Notes under the pieces: model-generated
Told to the model about the DNA's origin: nothing
Seen by the model: only the letters and a program-made list of their open reading frames with translations
Database searches by the model: none
Program-made: the position numbers and the translations under genes
Shown: in pieces, positions 28,839-53,162 of the stretch
How the letters are laid out: every line of letters starts with the position of its first letter
Position numbering within the stretch: the stretch's first letter is position 1
NCBI GenBank assembly: GCA_051294905.1
Contig: CM119378.1
Coordinates: 15,004,001 to 15,068,000, forward strand
Direction: 5' to 3'
DNA from: Botryllus schlosseri
Taxonomy: Eukaryota
DNA length: 64,000 nucleotides

Positions 28839-29540
28839 TGCGATGGTGTGTATTAGTGAAGTTGTAAGTAAAGCAAGTAAGTAATTCCCCGGTACAGGTT
28901 ACCTAATTTTGAACAAGCCACAGAGCAAATTAATTCGGTATGCCACTGAAAGTACGCTAAGCTGCTTCGGCAGCGGTTGTCTGAGGTGTAACACTAGTGA
29001 GAGAAGGCGTCCCAGCGCTGTGTATCCCGAGCGTCTTCGAATACCAGTCGGATTTCAGACGGACTGGCTTTTTTCGTCCTGTAGATGTAAAAACACGAGT
29101 TAAATCCGGCCTGGAGAGCTGGCAATCTGCATGAAACACCCGTCTTCATACGCATATCTGTTAGCCACACGTAGTAGCGCAGTAGGGTTTATTGCGGTAA
29201 GTTGAGTAGCCGACAATGTTATTCAAGCGTTAATTTCAAACTCAGGTCATTGAAACCGATGCACTTCATAGTTAAATTTTGATAACTTAAAGAACCAATC
29301 GAACGTGATCCGTGCCAGTGCTGCCTGACTGCTTAAGTGCTTATTCACCACAAATTGACCAAGATAATTCCAAAATTCAACATTGCAACGATCCAATAAT
29401 AACAGCAAGAGCAGATTAACATAGTGAGGAATAATCCACATTCAGCTAACCACAAATCATTTTAGCGATAGACACTGAATTTTCGCAAATATATTCAGGT
29501 ATCGCGATGTGGAGCTTTTTCGACCAGTTGTTATGATAGT

Positions 29541-29696
29541 TTCTTGGAGGTACAGGACTTCAATATACAATTGAATAGTACATTCATATTGATAGACAAT
29601 GCTCTTTCCGATTCTCACTAGTTGCTGACGATCACCCCTGACAAGTGCCAGTCAAAAATATTCAGGTTCATGTCAATATGAGTATATATACTATTC
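29541..29696. mobile_element. Penelope-like remnant: inverted pair of 3' end fragments
   Basis: 29541-29592 matches the tailed 3' terminus (minus strand) and 29593-29696 matches the tailless 3' UTR (plus strand) of the element at 47125-48758. Confidence 0.75.
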
Positions 29697-29873: not shown

Positions 29874-39513
<9,640 letters not shown>

Positions 39514-46273: not shown

Positions 46274-47320
46274 GGCTATGTTATCACCAGTCCCCACGCT
46301 ATAAATTTTGTAATTAAATTGGAAAAAGTCCATTCAATGATGATATCGAATAACAATAATCTATATATGTTTCGTCATATAGCCTGATACAAGCCCTCTT
46401 CTGATCATCATTGGTTTATTAGCAATTTTATCAGTTCAATACACCACAAAAAATGCGATACAATGAAAAATTATTGTTGGTTTATTCGTGTTAAAGGTTA
46501 CAAATAAAAATGCATACGTCGATCGAAATTTATTTGGTACCCCTAAAAACAGAAAACATCTTTTACAGACCCAATAACTCGCGTAGGTCAAAGTTATTTG
46601 CATGTGTGGAGCAATTCCGCAAGCGTGCAGTAGTAAACGAAGTCACGGAGTGTAATCACGGTGTTATCATAGAAAAAATTTCAAGTATTTTCGGTCCCAG
46701 TGTGTCATCGCTACCACATCTCCCCTGTTTTTAATACGAGGCAGTAATTTACTGAGCACAGCCGCACGTCGGCTTCAACATTCAACATATTCACTTGATT
46801 CAGGATTGGCCAAAATCGAGTACCTGCGTAATTCGATTCCCAGTCGAGTCGAGAATTGGAATTCTACCTATACTATGACGCCGTAATGGTAACAATGATC
46901 GACCTGCGGAGTTCAAACAATGTATCTTTCAGCGTCCGCAAGGAAAACAAGGCCAGCAGTAGCCACATGATGTCAAAAATCATTTTGCAGTTTTGATAAT
47001 ATTGTTCATAGTGCTTTGTAACAAAGCTGAGGTTCGACCACTACTTCCCAGAATTGTCGTTTTTGCGAACAGGCAACGGGCATGAGACATGTAGAGTATT
47101 TTACATTCTACATAGCACACTGAAGAGCTTCTTGGAGGTACAGAACTTCAATATACAATTAAATAGTATATTCATATTGAAATGAACCCGAATATTTTCG
47201 GCTGACACTCGTCAGGGGTAATCGTCAGCAACTAGTAGAGAATTGGAAAGAACATTGTATATCAACAATCGTATCACAAAATATGACGTCACCAGCATGA
47301 AATTTCGAATGAGAGAGCGT

Positions 47321-47935
47321 TCAATGTACTATTTTTAGGTGATACACGAACTCCTTTTGTTGACAGAGTTTTGGTTGGTGTATTTTGATAAAAGTTGATT
47401 CCAAGGCACACAAATGGAATTGTGAACGGCCTCGACCTACGATTCGAAATCGGTCGTCTCGATAATTATTCGCACAAATCGGATTATCCAACAGATGTTT
47501 GCCGATGGCAGAATTAATTGCCTTTGATCGATCCGCATCAATCTTAAGTGGATGAGTTAAGGGTGAGCTTTTCACATCGCGTGACGCACGTGTTCTGATA
47601 AATCTGGGGACATGTTGGTTTATGCGGTCCTGCAGACGTCTTGACGTTCTTCCCACGTAGCCACAATCACAGTGGCACCTATATTCGTACACTACATTAC
47701 TTTGTTGAAGTGCAGGAAGGACGTCTTTGCGTGTTGAAGGGAGCAGTTGTGTTGTTGTAAAAATCACATTGGTTTTGACTGTATCGTAACATTTACCGAC
47801 AGCAGAAATCAATTGTTTTTCAAAGCGGGTGGAAATGGGGCCAATCCAAGGTAGATGGATATAAACATCTTTTATTGTTCGTGCGGTGGGCTCTGTTCGT
47901 TTTTCTGCGTTGAATTGCGTTAATTTCCTCTCCAT
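47321..47935 (-). CDS. Mirror copy of the GIY-YIG ORF
   Basis: Translation identical to 47981-48595 in the ORF track. Confidence 0.9.
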   Translation of the reverse strand: MERKLTQFNAEKRTEPTARTIKDVYIHLPWIGPISTRFEKQLISAVGKCYDTVKTNVIFTTTQLLPSTRKDVLPALQQSNVVYEYRCHCDCGYVGRTSRRLQDRINQHVPRFIRTRASRDVKSSPLTHPLKIDADRSKAINSAIGKHLLDNPICANNYRDDRFRIVGRGRSQFHLCALESTFIKIHQPKLCQQKEFVYHLKIVH

Positions 47936-47980
47936 GCCGCGGCTGATGACGGTTACCCTGAACACGTCATCAGCCGCGGC

Positions 47981-48595
47981 ATGGAGAGGAAATTAACGCA
48001 ATTCAACGCAGAAAAACGAACAGAGCCCACCGCACGAACAATAAAAGATGTTTATATCCATCTACCTTGGATTGGCCCCATTTCCACCCGCTTTGAAAAA
48101 CAATTGATTTCTGCTGTCGGTAAATGTTACGATACAGTCAAAACCAATGTGATTTTTACAACAACACAACTGCTCCCTTCAACACGCAAAGACGTCCTTC
48201 CTGCACTTCAACAAAGTAATGTAGTGTACGAATATAGGTGCCACTGTGATTGTGGCTACGTGGGAAGAACGTCAAGACGTCTGCAGGACCGCATAAACCA
48301 ACATGTCCCCAGATTTATCAGAACACGTGCGTCACGCGATGTGAAAAGCTCACCCTTAACTCATCCACTTAAGATTGATGCGGATCGATCAAAGGCAATT
48401 AATTCTGCCATCGGCAAACATCTGTTGGATAATCCGATTTGTGCGAATAATTATCGAGACGACCGATTTCGAATCGTAGGTCGAGGCCGTTCACAATTCC
48501 ATTTGTGTGCCTTGGAATCAACTTTTATCAAAATACACCAACCAAAACTCTGTCAACAAAAGGAGTTCGTGTATCACCTAAAAATAGTACATTGA
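47981..48595 (+). CDS. GIY-YIG endonuclease domain of a Penelope-like element (no RT), 204 aa
   Basis: SNVVYEYRCHCDCGYVGRTSRRLQDRINQH...AIGKHL...LCALESTFIKIHQPKLCQQKE shows the GIY-YIG motif with the CCHH residues typical of PLEs; upstream in-frame DGYPEHVI and LPWIG are also PLE-like. Confidence 0.9.
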   Translation: MERKLTQFNAEKRTEPTARTIKDVYIHLPWIGPISTRFEKQLISAVGKCYDTVKTNVIFTTTQLLPSTRKDVLPALQQSNVVYEYRCHCDCGYVGRTSRRLQDRINQHVPRFIRTRASRDVKSSPLTHPLKIDADRSKAINSAIGKHLLDNPICANNYRDDRFRIVGRGRSQFHLCALESTFIKIHQPKLCQQKEFVYHLKIVH

Positions 48596-48696
48596 ACGCT
48601 CTCTCATTCGAAATTTCATGCTGGTGACGTCATATTTTGTGATACGATTGTTGATATACAATGTTCTTTCCAATTCTCTACTAGTTGCTGACGATT

Positions 48697-48730
48697 ACCC
48701 CTGACGAGTGTCAGCCGAAAATATTCGGGT
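48697..48730 (+). ncRNA. Putative minimal hammerhead ribozyme motif in the PLE 3' UTR (mirror copy at 47186-47219, minus strand)
   Basis: ACCC-CTGACGA-GTGTCAGCC-GAAA-ATAT-TC-GGGT: CUGANGA and GAAA core, palindromic ATAT in the helix III position, UC cleavage dinucleotide and a 4-bp helix I (ACCC/GGGT). Helix II is weak. Confidence 0.45.
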
Positions 48731-49618
48731 TCATTTCAATATGAATATACTATTTAATAGCACACTGAATGAGAAATACCGAACAATAGCATATAATAGG
48801 CAAACGAGGAAAATGAAGAGGTGTGAGGTACATAGGCGAAGTCGGTAATTAGAAAATGTTACCCAGCAATTTCGAATGGAGCATATATGCTATTCATTAC
48901 GTAGTAATAAGATTGCATACAAAACAAACGGTGTTTCAAACCACGATATAGTTTTAAACAAATGCCTTTTTGAAAAACACAAAATAGTGTCTTTTTCAAC
49001 GTTGCATAATTACGTAGTATACGGACGATTTGCACCCAATAGTCAGCGTATACGATATGGAGTGGCTGGAACCCTCGAAATCGTCATTGGTTTGACAGTT
49101 GTAGCAAGTAGATATAATAATTGGTACGGAATTGGTATTCTGATGATGACGACGGCCGACCTTAAAAATGCTGCATAGCCTAATGTAGTCCTGGTTAAAG
49201 ATATTTTTGATCTGTTTATCTGTTTGTCTGTGATGTCACAATTAAAGGCTCGTGACGTTATGGCCAAAAAAACAAACAATAAAAAACATGTTTTAAACAA
49301 GGGCTACGTTTTAAACATGTTTGTTTTAAATTGATTTTTGTTTTAAATGCAACCCTACAGAAAGGTATCGCTGTTTCGTGACAGCACATGAATCAGTTAT
49401 CGAATCATTACCTTGGCACGGATTTGATCTTGACAACAACTGTCTTGCGGGCAACCTGTTCCGTGTCAGATTGTGGTTTGCTTCGGAATGTGTGTCGTAA
49501 ATATAGCCTGTGTCAGTTTATGGATCGAGTAACCCATCCCATCGTCACCGGCGACCCAGAAGAATTATCTATAGAGACGCAGATTTGGGTCGCAACCCGT
49601 AGGCTTGGAATCATTGCG

Positions 49619-52600
49619 CTACTTGCTATATACGCTCTTATCCCGAAGAGGATACGATTTGTTTGTCAGCTCATGCTCGCTAAAGACGGGTTTATATCCA
49701 AGTCTGCGCATAACGTATGCGCACGATGTCTGAACATTCATGACATCAACAAATTTCATTTTCTCTCTCCACATGTATGCCGCAGTCCTTGAATCTCTGA
49801 TCGTACCATACGCACTTTGACTTTGAACTTTTATCGCGTGCATCTTCTTCTGAATTTCAAGACGTTCCTGAATATAGGCGACCAAAGTTAGATGTTCGTT
49901 AAATACAAATTTGATTTCAAACCGATGATGAGGCCAATTACCCCCGATATACTTTGATTATGATTATTTTGCAAGCGGAAATCGTGTTTGGTTGTACAAT
50001 ATAATCACAAAATCTAGATACCTGCCAATATACTCTTTCATAAACCGATAAATTCAACACTCTCCGCTAGTCTGTCAAGTTTGCGCCAGTATTTGTTACC
50101 AGTGCGATGACATTGCTGCTATAGTTCGCGACACGATAAAAACCGTTAATATTTATAAGATGCATGAATTACGGGTTAATGTCTTATAAAAATACAAGGA
50201 CTTTTCATGTTCTGAATAGCGCATAGTCCTCATTTAGTGAGATTTTCAGCTTTAACCACAGGTCGCAGTCGCTGCACAGGAACCCCAATAATTAGGGATG
50301 GTGTGAACCTCTGAAAGGTTCAGGTTCGTGTGAACGCGAACCTTTTTGAAAGGTTCTGTGTGAACACGAACGTGAACCTCATGACGTCACGTGACGTCAT
50401 ATTGCTAGTTTCAACCCTATATTTCAGTGAAGTGATAGCATATATCAATGTACACGATACGGAGCAACGAGTCGGGCCACATAATGCCACAATACTGAAG
50501 TACATATTGACGTTTTAAACGTCGCTAAATGTATCAACTTGGGCAATCAAATGATATAATATATATTCTGTCGCTTTGCCAACAATATCGACGAGGACTT
50601 GCAAGGAAATATAGGTTAAGCTTACGCCTTGGCGGTCTAGGCCAGACCGGACAATGTAGTCGGCGTCCGAGTATTTCTACGTTGATATTGAGCACAGTGT
50701 AAAACGGGTTTCTATATACTTGCGACCGATATAACCCCATTAACAAGTTATACAGCAGTATAGCCAACACCACAATCGCACGGATTAATTTTTATGATAC
50801 AGTAAACGTATCAATTCAAGATTGACCCCGCTGACCCCGCACGCTTGCTAGATTTTTTACATCAGACAACGATATCAATCTCATTGATTGGTTGAATAAG
50901 CATCATTCGCTCAGTACATGTAGTGTATTTCACCCTTGATGTTGTGAGATTGCGGGTAAAGCCCACAGCAGAGAGTCACTAAATATTCACAAACGGAAAG
51001 CTGTATATTTCAAGCAAACTTTTGTAACAAAGCAAGTAAAATTTATTAGATTGTCAAGGTGTATACTCGCTTAGTGTTTATTTTCATGCTGCCATCGCCG
51101 TGCGTAGAGTGCATAGAGTGTTATAATAATTAAAGTAAACATTGTAATATATGAAAAAGGTTCACAGTGCAGAACCTCCAAAGGTTCGTTTGTGAACGTG
51201 AACCTCCGAATTTCCGAGGTTCACACACAGAACGCGAACGTGAACCTCACGTTCACACCATCCCTACCAATAATACGACTCACGGCAATAAGGCTGTGTT
51301 GTTGTACATGACCCTTGGCGAAAGTGATGACCTTTATTTTAGTCAGTAATTTGTCAATTGTCACGTTCAGACTACTACGATTCACATTATTGCCCAGAAC
51401 TTTTCACCTGTCCATATTTTGCCTTGTTATGTACAGATTGTGTACACATATAGATAGGCCCAAGAAAAAAATGTGAAACATATATACACAACTATAAAAA
51501 TCATGTATAAATCTGGGAGATAAAAGCTCTTTCTTCCATAATAGGTATTAATCTCATTGGAAACTGGGTAGTGGAGATGGCTCCAAATCATGATCACAAT
51601 TGCTTTAGTTTAGACACATCCTAGACTCAGAAGACATCGGTCCCAATTTTGTTACTGTCGGAGTCGCTATGAAAACGTAATGTTGCGAATTTGAAATTTG
51701 AAAAGTCTCGATGCGAAATCACTCGAAGCCTTTTGTCGGAGTCAGTGCTAGAAACTGGTTTGCTGCTAACAATCAGTAGAACTATATTAGGAGTAAAAGT
51801 GTAGCCTGTGCTACTGAGGAAGAATTCAGACAGTCTGTGAAGAGAAGTCTCACCTCGTTAGATATCGACTCGGACATGAGCTTCTCAGCGTAAACACGCA
51901 TCGTCAGTTTTGGATCAGTGGTAGCCACCTCCAACCAATCAGTAACAACTTTCGGGAGCGGCAAATCTAAAAATCTGATATCGATCGTAAGTGCCTAAAA
52001 GTGCTGTCTACCTTCATGAAGCAGTCGCACATTCACAATCCCTGAGACAAAACTTACCGATATATTCGTTCAGCTAATTCCAAAGGTTCTTCTGCAATGT
52101 CTTCGTAATGAACCCTGAGATATCTTCTTGAAGAAATCATGCCTCCTCCTTGATCTATACAAATATGTATAATGCATAACACTGCGTCACGAGCTGCTGC
52201 GCTTACGGTAACTGGAACTAACCTTTTAGTTGTTGATCCACATATTCAATGTTCCGTTGCATCCGACTGCAAAGTTTCTTGGTAACCTTTTTGATAACTA
52301 GCGAAGAAAAGGATTCCGAGGAGGCCACGGATCTAATTATTGCTCTTGGATCTCTCACAAGATGTATAACGAATACTTCACTTGCATTGTTTAATTTCTC
52401 GTAAACAGAATTTAATTTCGACAAATCACATGCCCTAATCACTTTGTATACTACCGCGGTAGAGGATGAGCATATTGCCGATAACAACGCCGGCTCTAAA
52501 GGTGAACTGCAATTGAAGGCAGACGTTTTAGTCAACTTTTTTCGAGGAACATCTTCCAGACGAAACCTTACATCTTTACCTTGCGACAGTGTCAATTCAG

Positions 52601-53162
52601 AACGTCTAAATGCTTCACAAACACTTGAGTATTTGTATGTCAACGCGTCACTTTTGTTAGGATAACATATATTATGAGCCCGACATCTTTTAGCATCAAC
52701 TTCCACGTGGTCAATGTCAGCTGCGTCGCGATATAATGAGGCCATTTCACGAAAATCACATTTCGCCAACGTTTCCATGGCTCGTACTCTTCTTGTATTA
52801 CTTCCATCGCAAAAGAAGCCGAAAGGATAAAGCGGCTCGTACAAATAAAACAAGCCTGGGTTTTTATTGAAAAATTCCCCCAGGAACGTGGAGCCCGAAC
52901 GCTGGTTACTGAAAATGAACACGACTTTCCCTTTTTTGTCATATAGGCTGTGTTGGTTATCTTCAACAAAATGTGTTCGTAATTGAAATTTCTTTGCGGT
53001 TTCAAATTTCGCACTCTTGGTATTTGTTTCGATGTATAAGACAAATAAAAGCAATAGTAGCAAAAGTCCCGGCACTTTCAATCGATCTAAAACATTTCCT
53101 TCTCGAGCACTGCGCAGAGCTCTACACACGCAAGCAGCAGCAAGATGCAATGACCGTATCAT
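49619..53162 (-). CDS. Carbohydrate 6-O-sulfotransferase (CHST1/CHST3/CHST5-like), paralogue A, ~468 aa (exons 53162-52223, 52154-52058, 51974-51854, 49867-49619)
   Basis: N-terminal TM segment LLLLLLLFVLYI, 5'-PSB motif SNQRSGSTFLGE, FYLYEP, 3'-PB motif HLVRDPRAI, HYEDIA and C-terminal WREK..VQTSC..VMRRLGY; GT-AG introns with phases 1, 2, 0. Confidence 0.92.
50293..51266. mobile_element. hAT-type MITE with GTGAAC/GTTCAC subterminal repeats, 974 bp
   Basis: TIRs TAGGGATGGTGTGAAC/GTTCACACCATCCCTA; exact TSD CCAATAAT; lies in the last intron of CHST paralogue A. Confidence 0.93.

What the first reader, a model, noticed from the sequence alone, without database searches (positions are those of the whole stretch)
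47113..48769. TSD-flanked 1.6-kb Penelope palindrome encoding two intact GIY-YIG endonucleases and no RT
Seen: two 794-bp arms with no mismatch I could find by eye and identical translations, separated by a 13-nt spacer, each with an uninterrupted 204-aa GIY-YIG ORF starting at an internal ATG. The unit is bounded by an 11-12 bp direct repeat (TAGCACACTGAA), so it inserted in one event. The plus frame reads through the spacer (DGYPEHVISRG), and the junction is a small hairpin CTGATGACG..CGTCATCAG, suggesting fold-back priming of truncated cDNA. Known: PLEs often form inverted pLTRs and are 5'-truncated. Inference: the structure could yield an ~800-bp dsRNA hairpin that silences the whole family in trans, extrude a cruciform, express an RT-less endonuclease, or be an endonuclease-only satellite element mobilised by an autonomous PLE.
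Basis: partly seen in the sequence, partly recalled or inferred. Interest (0 to 1): 0.75.

Follow-up and report, generated by a model that had tools for sequence, protein, structure and literature searches.

The report
Dead mirror-image Penelope retrotransposon insertion
This is one very recent, non-functional insertion of an abundant Penelope-like jumping gene that landed as two mirror-image truncated copies, the usual pattern for these elements, so it is ordinary.

Summary
Confirmed. Window 47112-48769 holds a perfect 793/794-nt inverted repeat with a 13-nt spacer, flanked by a 13-bp direct repeat.

It is one recent, dead-on-arrival insertion of a high-copy Penelope-like retrotransposon. The family unit is 2,692 bp, carries an 848-codon RT + GIY-YIG ORF, and has at least 1,468 3' ends in this 495-Mb genome. 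The insertion is two 5'-truncated copies head to head. One carries the 34-nt PLE "tail"; the other does not.

A contig from another sample shows the empty site with a single 13-mer. The duplication is therefore real and the insertion polymorphic.

The layout is the family norm and the published PLE pattern. About half of the first 100 listed 3' ends sit in such dimers. All 40 dimers with a clear duplication have 10-14-bp duplications and exactly one tail.

The centre junction, and a private base change shared by both arms, occur nowhere else in the genome, so the palindrome has not propagated. RNA reads do not cross its centre. The "intact" 204-codon ORFs are just the unmutated C-terminus of the polyprotein.

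Simple fold-back of one cDNA cannot explain a tail on the arm that lacks the loop. Priming on both target strands from one RNA fits better.

The scan met this family, and similar palindromes, elsewhere in this genome.

The parts
47112..47124 (+). Left copy of the 13-bp target-site duplication ATAGCACACTGAA
   Evidence: Direct repeat D2. The empty-site contig of run X2 joins 47114 to 48760 and holds one copy only.
47125..47158 (-). 34-nt PLE 'tail' (family unit 2660-2692 plus the first base of the next unit). Present only on the left arm.
   Evidence: BLAST to the tandem unit. TSD-anchored measurement gives 34 nt on the left and -1 on the right.
47159..47951 (-). Left arm: inverted 5'-truncated copy, unit 1867-2659. 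It covers the C-terminal linker + GIY-YIG part of the ORF and the 3' UTR.
47949..47951 (.). 3-nt microhomology (ACG) shared by the inner end of the left arm and the 5' extension of the right copy
   Evidence: Junction compared with the unit sequence upstream of the right arm.
47952..47964 (+). 13-nt spacer = unit 1854-1866. It is element sequence continuous with the right arm (codons GYPEH of the full ORF).
   Evidence: full ORF.
47965..48757 (+). Right arm: 5'-truncated copy, unit 1867-2659, without tail. The last A is shared with the duplication.
48757..48769 (+). Right copy of the 13-bp target-site duplication
47981..48595 (+). 204-codon ORF from an internal ATG. It is the C-terminal 204 of the 848 codons of the family's RT-EN polyprotein (GIY-YIG part).
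47321..47935 (-). Mirror copy of the same 204-codon ORF
48196..48196 (+). Private synonymous change (unit 2098 G>C), mirrored at 47720. It is present in both arms and nowhere else in the genome.
   Evidence: The 33-mer with C has 2 matches, the two arms, against 265 with G.
48741..48757 (+). Start codon and first codons of the full-length PLE ORF (unit 2643 onward), facing outward. The mirror is at 47159-47175 (-).
   Evidence: ORF analysis of the tandem unit.

Best explanation
The stretch is one recent, polymorphic, dead-on-arrival insertion of an abundant, young Penelope-like retrotransposon. The family unit is 2,692 bp and its single ORF encodes RT plus a C-terminal GIY-YIG endonuclease.

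Shown: two 5'-truncated copies lie head to head between the two copies of a 13-bp target duplication. One begins at the family's tail-end start zone (unit about 2693) and the other about 34 nt upstream (unit 2659). The inner ends (unit 1867 and 1851-1854) meet at a 3-nt microhomology.

Inferred mechanism: the endonuclease cut both target strands 13 bp apart. Each 3'-OH primed reverse transcription on the same RNA molecule, one at each of the two start sites. Both cDNAs stopped at nearly the same place, probably a broken 5' end of that RNA. Their 3' ends then paired through ACG/CGT and were filled in.

The result has no RT, no promoter of its own for the ORF remnants, no daughters, and no detectable transcript across its centre.
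For: Identity:
- Each arm is 99.8% identical (2 differences in 826 nt for the tail-bearing arm) to a 2,692-bp tandem unit with an 848-codon ORF.
- RVT_1 matches at E 7.8e-9. Of 37 aligned homologues, 36 match RVT_1 and 11 match GIY-YIG. The profile hits solved RTs, including telomerase RT.

Single event and polymorphism:
- An X2 contig lies on 46502-47114 and then 48760-48944, which is the empty site with one 13-mer.
- X1 contigs cover both filled junctions.

Typicality:
- The genome has 1,468 exact 3' ends, and 54 of the first 100 sit in -/+ pairs.
- All 40 dimers with a clear duplication have exactly one tail (31-43 nt) and one tail-less end. Their duplications are 10-14 bp, and 39 of 40 are 12-14 bp.
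- About half of all ends genome-wide carry a tail (744/1,468). Independent choice at each end would therefore give about 50% mixed pairs.

One template:
- The arms are identical and share a change found nowhere else in the genome.
- Across 38 dimers, 34 non-majority variants are shared by both arms and 35 are not.

Near-equal arms are a recurrent class:
- 8 of 34 dimers have inner ends within 21 nt, against 1.7 expected (P about 4e-5).
- Spacers range from 4 to 28 nt.

No propagation or expression:
- The centre 34-mer is unique in the genome.
- RNA depth falls to about 0 at the centre, and 96% of laid RNA reads run on into other flanks.

Literature:
- Inverted 5'-truncated copies and a 30-40-bp tail at one end are typical of PLEs (PMC8557442, PMC3846280).
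- A PLE protein cleaves and extends both strands in vitro and starts RT at two sites a tail-length apart (PMC11167929).
Against: - The interior of the palindrome (arm length, centre) rests on the assembly alone. No long read or contig across the centre was shown to me.
- The two-primer, one-RNA mechanism is inferred from end products. A cis fold-back followed by trimming of one tail is not excluded.
- In 3 of 10 near-symmetric dimers the loop belongs to the tail-bearing arm, which a fold-back that stops short would also give.
- The private variant could come from a source copy absent from this assembly, or from arm-to-arm gene conversion.
- Only one RNA run was laid, with about 6% of it read and no small-RNA library. 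Absence of a hairpin transcript is therefore weak evidence.
Confidence: 0.8

Rival explanations
1. Cis fold-back (self-priming). One cDNA was made by target-primed reverse transcription. Its 3' end snapped back on itself through the ACG/CGT microhomology with a 13-nt loop and copied itself to make the second arm. 2013.
For: - The junction fits a 3-bp stem with a 13-nt loop exactly.
- Near-symmetric dimers with 4-28-nt loops are strongly enriched.
- The arms share a private variant.
- The hypothesis is published (PMC3846280).
Against: - The loop is continuous with the tail-less right arm, so that arm would be the RNA-templated strand. Its snap-back copy (the left arm) carries 34 nt of tail that the template lacks. 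The same holds in 7 of 10 near-symmetric dimers.
- All 40 dimers have exactly one tail. A self-copy would give two tails or none unless one is trimmed afterwards.
- It does not explain the many dimers with very unequal arms.
Confidence: 0.15
2. Functional locus. The palindrome is kept because it does one of three things: it makes an ~800-bp hairpin RNA that silences the family, it expresses an RT-less endonuclease, or it is a non-autonomous element mobilised in trans.
For: - It is a perfect long inverted repeat with a short loop, and both ORF remnants are open.
- PLE inverted structures are associated with small RNAs in a rotifer (PMC3846280).
Against: - The insertion is absent from another sample (empty site), so it is not fixed.
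- The centre junction and the private allele are unique in the genome.
- RNA depth is about 0 at the centre.
- The ORF is open because the copy is about 99.8% identical to its family. Dozens of other 5'-truncated copies at 99-100% identity were seen.
- Several hundred similar dimers probably exist, so nothing singles this one out.
Confidence: 0.03
3. Assembly artefact, or a later rearrangement. Either a single 5'-truncated copy was mis-assembled as a fold-back, or it was duplicated in inverted orientation after insertion.
For: - Palindromes are a known assembly hazard for PLEs (PMC8557442).
- No read across the centre was shown.
Against: - Short-read contigs of the source sample cover both outer junctions, and each shows an element 3' end facing outward. 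Two inverted 3' ends must therefore exist at this site.
- The empty site matches a single 13-bp duplication around the whole unit. A later inverted duplication would not recreate that.
- The ends differ by the tail.
- All 40 other dimers analysed have the same anatomy.
Confidence: 0.02

Closest known systems
Canonical endonuclease-containing Penelope-like elements (Penelope/Poseidon-type) and their inverted pseudo-LTR insertions (PMC8557442, PMC3846280)
   Same: - Single ORF with RT followed by a C-terminal GIY-YIG endonuclease carrying the CCHH residues.
- Heavy 5' truncation.
- An inverted 5'-truncated copy abutting a direct one.
- A 30-40-bp tail at one end only.
- A short target duplication and AT-rich targets.
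- The ORF start codon lies inside the terminal repeat and runs through the tail.
   Different: - Here both copies stop before the RT, so there is no full-length unit between the inverted ends.
- The clade (Penelope/Poseidon, Neptune or Nematis) was not placed by a tree. Only the lack of extra cysteines in the RT-EN linker points to Penelope/Poseidon.
- No hammerhead ribozyme was detected by Rfam.
PAc, the Poseidon element of Anolis carolinensis, studied in vitro (PMC11167929)
   Same: - The protein cleaves and extends both target strands.
- Reverse transcription starts at two adjacent internal sites whose spacing equals the genomic tail.
- The ORF begins upstream of the start sites.
   Different: - In vitro, no difference in start site between strands was seen. 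Here every two-armed insertion examined uses one site of each kind.
- The start sites lie about 17 and about 51 nt into the ORF, rather than 111-118 nt.
L1 twin-priming inversions (Ostertag and Kazazian 2001; from my own knowledge, not read here)
   Same: - Both 3'-OH ends of a staggered target break prime cDNA synthesis on one RNA.
- The two cDNAs are joined at a microhomology.
- The whole is flanked by one target duplication.
   Different: - In L1 the second primer anneals internally, so the inverted and direct segments are different parts of the RNA.
- Here both start at the 3' end region, so the arms duplicate each other and form a palindrome.
Hairpin-RNA (endo-siRNA) loci made of inverted repeats (from my own knowledge)
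   Same: A long, perfect inverted repeat with a short loop, derived from a transposon.
   Different: - No transcript was seen across the centre.
- The insertion is polymorphic.
- It is one of probably several hundred similar structures.
- No small-RNA data were available.

Membership tests
Penelope-like element (EN+, canonical domain order) | PLE/telomerase-related reverse transcriptase in the family's full-length unit | tested here: met
   The 848-codon ORF of the 2,692-bp unit matches RVT_1 at E 7.8e-9. A profile of 37 homologues hits solved RTs, including telomerase RT. The window's own copy lacks this part.
Penelope-like element (EN+, canonical domain order) | C-terminal GIY-YIG endonuclease with the CCHH residues | tested here: met
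   Pfam GIY-YIG is sub-threshold on the arm ORF (E 0.026). 11 of 37 homologues match PF01541, best E 1.2e-5. Y727, C731, C733, Y737, G739, R748, H752 and H791 are invariant.
Penelope-like element (EN+, canonical domain order) | Tandem and/or inverted 5'-truncated copies (pseudo-LTR architecture) | tested here: met
   Tandem array of period 2,692 bp. Head-to-head dimers at the window and more than 40 other loci.
Penelope-like element (EN+, canonical domain order) | [quoted passage not shown] | tested here: met
   The window has 34 nt on the left and none on the right. The family range is 31-43 nt, with exactly one tail in 40 of 40 dimers.
Penelope-like element (EN+, canonical domain order) | Short target-site duplication made at insertion | tested here: met
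   13-bp repeat. The empty site with one copy is seen in run X2. The family mode is 12-13 bp.
Penelope-like element (EN+, canonical domain order) | Hammerhead ribozyme motif in the terminal repeat (typical, not universal) | tested here: inconclusive
   Rfam gave no hammerhead match at E<=1 in the window or E<=5 in a full unit. By eye, CUGACGA ... GAAA ... UC is present at 48697-48758 with an upstream GCTGAC box complementary to GTCAGC. Earlier scan notes call this a pseudoknotted helix II.
Non-autonomous or satellite element propagated as a unit | Several copies sharing the same internal junction at different genomic sites | tested here: not met
   The centre 34-mer has 1 match in 495 Mb even with 1 mismatch allowed. 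The private allele is found only in the two arms.
Hairpin-RNA / endo-siRNA locus | Transcript running through both arms and the loop; small RNAs from the arms | tested here: inconclusive
   RNA depth is 0-0.7 in the two centre bins in one run of which about 6% was read. No small-RNA library was available.
L1-type twin-priming inversion | Inverted and direct segments are non-overlapping parts of one RNA | tested here: not met
   Both arms cover the same unit positions, 1867-2659.

The most novel reading that the evidence does not exclude
Three family-wide patterns appear together: exactly one tail in 40 of 40 two-armed insertions, private variants shared by both arms, and an excess of near-equal arms. 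Together they would mean that in vivo a Penelope particle primes on both target strands from one and the same RNA molecule. It would use each of two fixed start sites about 34 nt apart exactly once, a concerted double target-primed reverse transcription. This goes beyond the published in vitro finding, where start site and strand looked independent. On this reading, the window's palindrome is a snapshot in which both cDNAs ran to the same broken 5' end.
Probability: 0.35. Interest if true: 0.5.

Novelty: new member of a known kind. Interest (0 to 1): 0.2.

Why it matters
For this locus, very little. It is a neutral, recent, polymorphic scar of an ordinary retrotransposon, and it may serve as an insertion marker.

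The family around it has some value. It has thousands of near-identical copies, intact tandem units and presence/absence polymorphism, so it is a natural record of Penelope integration events. The strict one-tail rule and the shared private variants give in vivo constraints on a transposition mechanism that has so far been studied only once in vitro.

Tried and rejected
- **Rfam on the window and on a full unit.** The only hits were sub-threshold microRNA-precursor models on the palindrome centre. Any perfect hairpin gives these. There was no hammerhead.
- **PDB sequence search with a family profile.** It found RTs but no GIY-YIG structure, so endonuclease identity rests on Pfam matches in homologues and on conserved residues.
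- **Fixed spacing between the two inner ends.** Differences of 15-16 nt recurred in four dimers, but exact spacers range from 4 to 28 nt, so the idea was dropped.
- **Tail-less ends dominating single copies.** A sample of 11 suggested this. Genome-wide counts (744 tailed of 1,468 ends) do not support it.
- **A recurrent composite: 89 nt of PLE tail end next to a segment 85% like unit 595-752.** It looked like a PLE-mobilised satellite. It turned out to sit inside a 1.49-kb element with 22-bp terminal inverted repeats, so a DNA-transposon-type element carries a PLE fragment along.
- **Empty-site search in the own assembly.** Left out because the joined sequence has no reference. The X2 contig already shows the empty site.
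- **Per-site majority calls across copies.** Used inside a script only to count variants.
- **Findings look-ups.** Two searches by several words returned nothing that matched all of them.
Full report
**Observation**

- The arms 47159-47951 and 47965-48757 are 793/793 complementary.
- The spacer is 13 nt (47952-47964).
- The flanking direct repeat is ATAGCACACTGAA, 13 nt, at 47112-47124 and 48757-48769.
- Each arm holds an open 204-codon frame from an ATG: 47981-48595 on the plus strand and its mirror at 47935-47321.
- The structure is not symmetric. 34 nt (47125-47158) lie between the left repeat and the left arm, while the right arm abuts its repeat directly.

**What the arms are**

- A search of the window's own genome (495 Mb, 219 contigs) with one arm found dozens of copies at 99-100% identity and about 2,960 first-look candidates.
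- Among them is a tandem array with period 2,692 bp.
- Read in tandem, the unit has one 848-codon ORF. It starts at an ATG 17 nt before the tail-less 3' end of the preceding copy (unit 2643), runs through the tail, and stops at unit 2497.
- The ORF matches RVT_1. Its many ~840-residue homologues carry RVT_1 (36 of 37) and GIY-YIG (11 of 37). A family profile hits solved reverse transcriptases, including telomerase RT.
- An ORF that begins inside the terminal repeat and extends through the tail is exactly the organisation described for Penelope elements of Adineta vaga (PMC3846280).
- The window's arms are unit 1867-2659 plus tail (left, inverted) and unit 1851/1854-2659 without tail (right).
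- The spacer is unit 1854-1866, so it belongs to the right copy. The two copies meet at a 3-nt microhomology, ACG.
- The 204-codon ORF is simply the C-terminal quarter of the polyprotein, starting at an internal methionine in the RT-EN linker.

**One event, recent, polymorphic**

- Contigs of a run from another study (X2) lie on 46502-47114 and continue at 48760-48944. This is the empty site with a single 13-mer, on a haplotype with 8 flank differences.
- Contigs of the probable source sample (X1) cover both filled junctions (46681-47147 and 48752-48942). Two outward-facing element 3' ends therefore exist at this site independently of how the interior was assembled.
- The arms differ from the family unit at two synonymous positions.
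- One of these, unit 2098 G>C, is found only in these two arms, against 265 copies with G.
- The 34-mer across the centre is unique in the genome.
- The palindrome therefore has no daughters, and the idea of an endonuclease-only satellite element fails.

**The layout is the family norm**

- The 30-mer at the 3' end has 1,468 exact matches. Of the first 100 sites listed, 54 form minus/plus pairs a few hundred to a few thousand bases apart.
- I fetched 38 such pairs plus those found in the first search and mapped them on the unit.
- All 40 dimers with a clear target duplication have a duplication of 10-14 bp (39 of 40 are 12-14 bp; mode 12-13).
- All 40 also have exactly one end extended by 31-43 nt and one end within -2 to +7 nt of unit 2659.
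- Genome-wide, about half of all ends carry the tail (744 of 1,468). Independent choice would give only about half of the pairs mixed.

**Mechanism**

Three patterns constrain it.
1. In the window the loop is continuous with the tail-less arm, so that arm was copied from RNA. The other arm carries 34 nt that the first lacks. It therefore cannot be a simple snap-back copy of the first. The same holds in 7 of 10 near-symmetric dimers.
2. The arms of a dimer tend to share non-majority variants: 34 shared against 35 unshared over 14.5 kb. These include changes private to a dimer, as in the window. This points to one template molecule.
3. Dimers whose inner ends lie within 21 nt of each other are far more frequent than shuffling predicts: 8 of 34 against 1.7 expected, P about 4e-5, with two more in a later sample. 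Their spacers span 4-28 nt.

The reading that fits all three, together with the in vitro work on the Anolis element (both strands cleaved and extended; two RT start sites a tail-length apart; PMC11167929), runs as follows.
- The endonuclease makes a 13-bp staggered cut.
- Both 3'-OH ends prime on one RNA, one at each start site.
- When both cDNAs reach the same 5' end of the RNA, their 3' ends pair by a few bases and are filled in, giving a near-perfect palindrome.
- When one stops early, the arms are unequal.

These steps are inferred, not shown. A cis fold-back with later trimming of one tail (the self-priming idea of PMC3846280) remains possible. I give it about 15%.

**Function**

- In the one RNA run with raw reads (about 6% of it read), depth is about 70 at the outer 3' ends of the arms. 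It falls to 0-0.7 at the centre. 96% of the reads continue into sequence unlike the window, so they come from other copies.
- There is no sign of a transcript through the loop. No small-RNA data were at hand.
- The open frames reflect youth. Both substitutions are synonymous, but two sites say nothing about selection.
- Cruciform extrusion is a generic possibility for any such palindrome and was not testable.

**Comparison and verdict**

- The element meets the tested defining features of canonical EN+ Penelope-like elements. The hammerhead motif is the exception: Rfam does not detect it, although a core-like CUGACGA...GAAA...UC stretch is visible at 48697-48758.
- Earlier notes of this scan describe the same family elsewhere in this genome. 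They report truncated tails with a hammerhead whose second helix pairs with an upstream box. They also report a 16.2-kb mirror-image insertion with a 12-bp duplication and a 264-bp palindrome.
- The finding is thus a correct observation of an ordinary, already described kind of structure.
- The family-level regularities are the only part that might interest a specialist.

Noticed in passing
window 48697-48758 (+), mirror 47158-47219 (-): A hammerhead-like core (CTGACGA ... GAAA ... TTC) with ACCC/GGGT as a possible helix I and a palindromic AATATT in place of helix III. The expected helix II hairpin is missing. Instead, an upstream GCTGAC box is complementary to GTCAGC. Rfam reports nothing here at E<=1.
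   Followed up: partly
L031 (G000:C16:20948000-20957999) and on to about 20960757: A tandem array of at least four 2,692-bp units at 99.9-100% identity, preceded by an inverted partial copy. Each internal unit carries the open 848-codon ORF.
   Followed up: partly
L090:1027-2516 (G000:C10), also L089, L091-L094 and at least 40 loci: A 1.49-kb repeat family with 22-bp terminal inverted repeats (TCTAGACCAGTGGTTCTCAACC). Internally it carries an inverted 89-nt PLE tail end (unit 2604-2692, 98%) next to a segment 85% like unit 595-752. This looks like a DNA-transposon-type element that amplified after a PLE fragment landed in it.
   Followed up: partly
window 29538-29695 and 34911-35121: Older fragments of the same PLE family (83-93% identity). 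The first is itself a small head-to-head dimer: a 55-nt arm with tail and a 107-nt arm without.
   Followed up: no
window 52218-53162 (-): A 314-codon ORF with a motif resembling the PAPS-binding site of sulfotransferases (SNQRSGSTF). It is the nearest candidate gene, about 3.4 kb from the insertion. Not tested.
   Followed up: no
window 49313-49400: Read depth jumps about a thousand-fold at 49313 in all DNA runs, and RNA depth rises too. This is the edge of another high-copy repeat.
   Followed up: no
L037:1599-1612 (G000:C1:1044531-1047753): The centre of a 1.5-kb-armed dimer holds a 12-nt filler that duplicates the adjacent CCTGGATTTG. This looks like template slippage at the junction.
   Followed up: no
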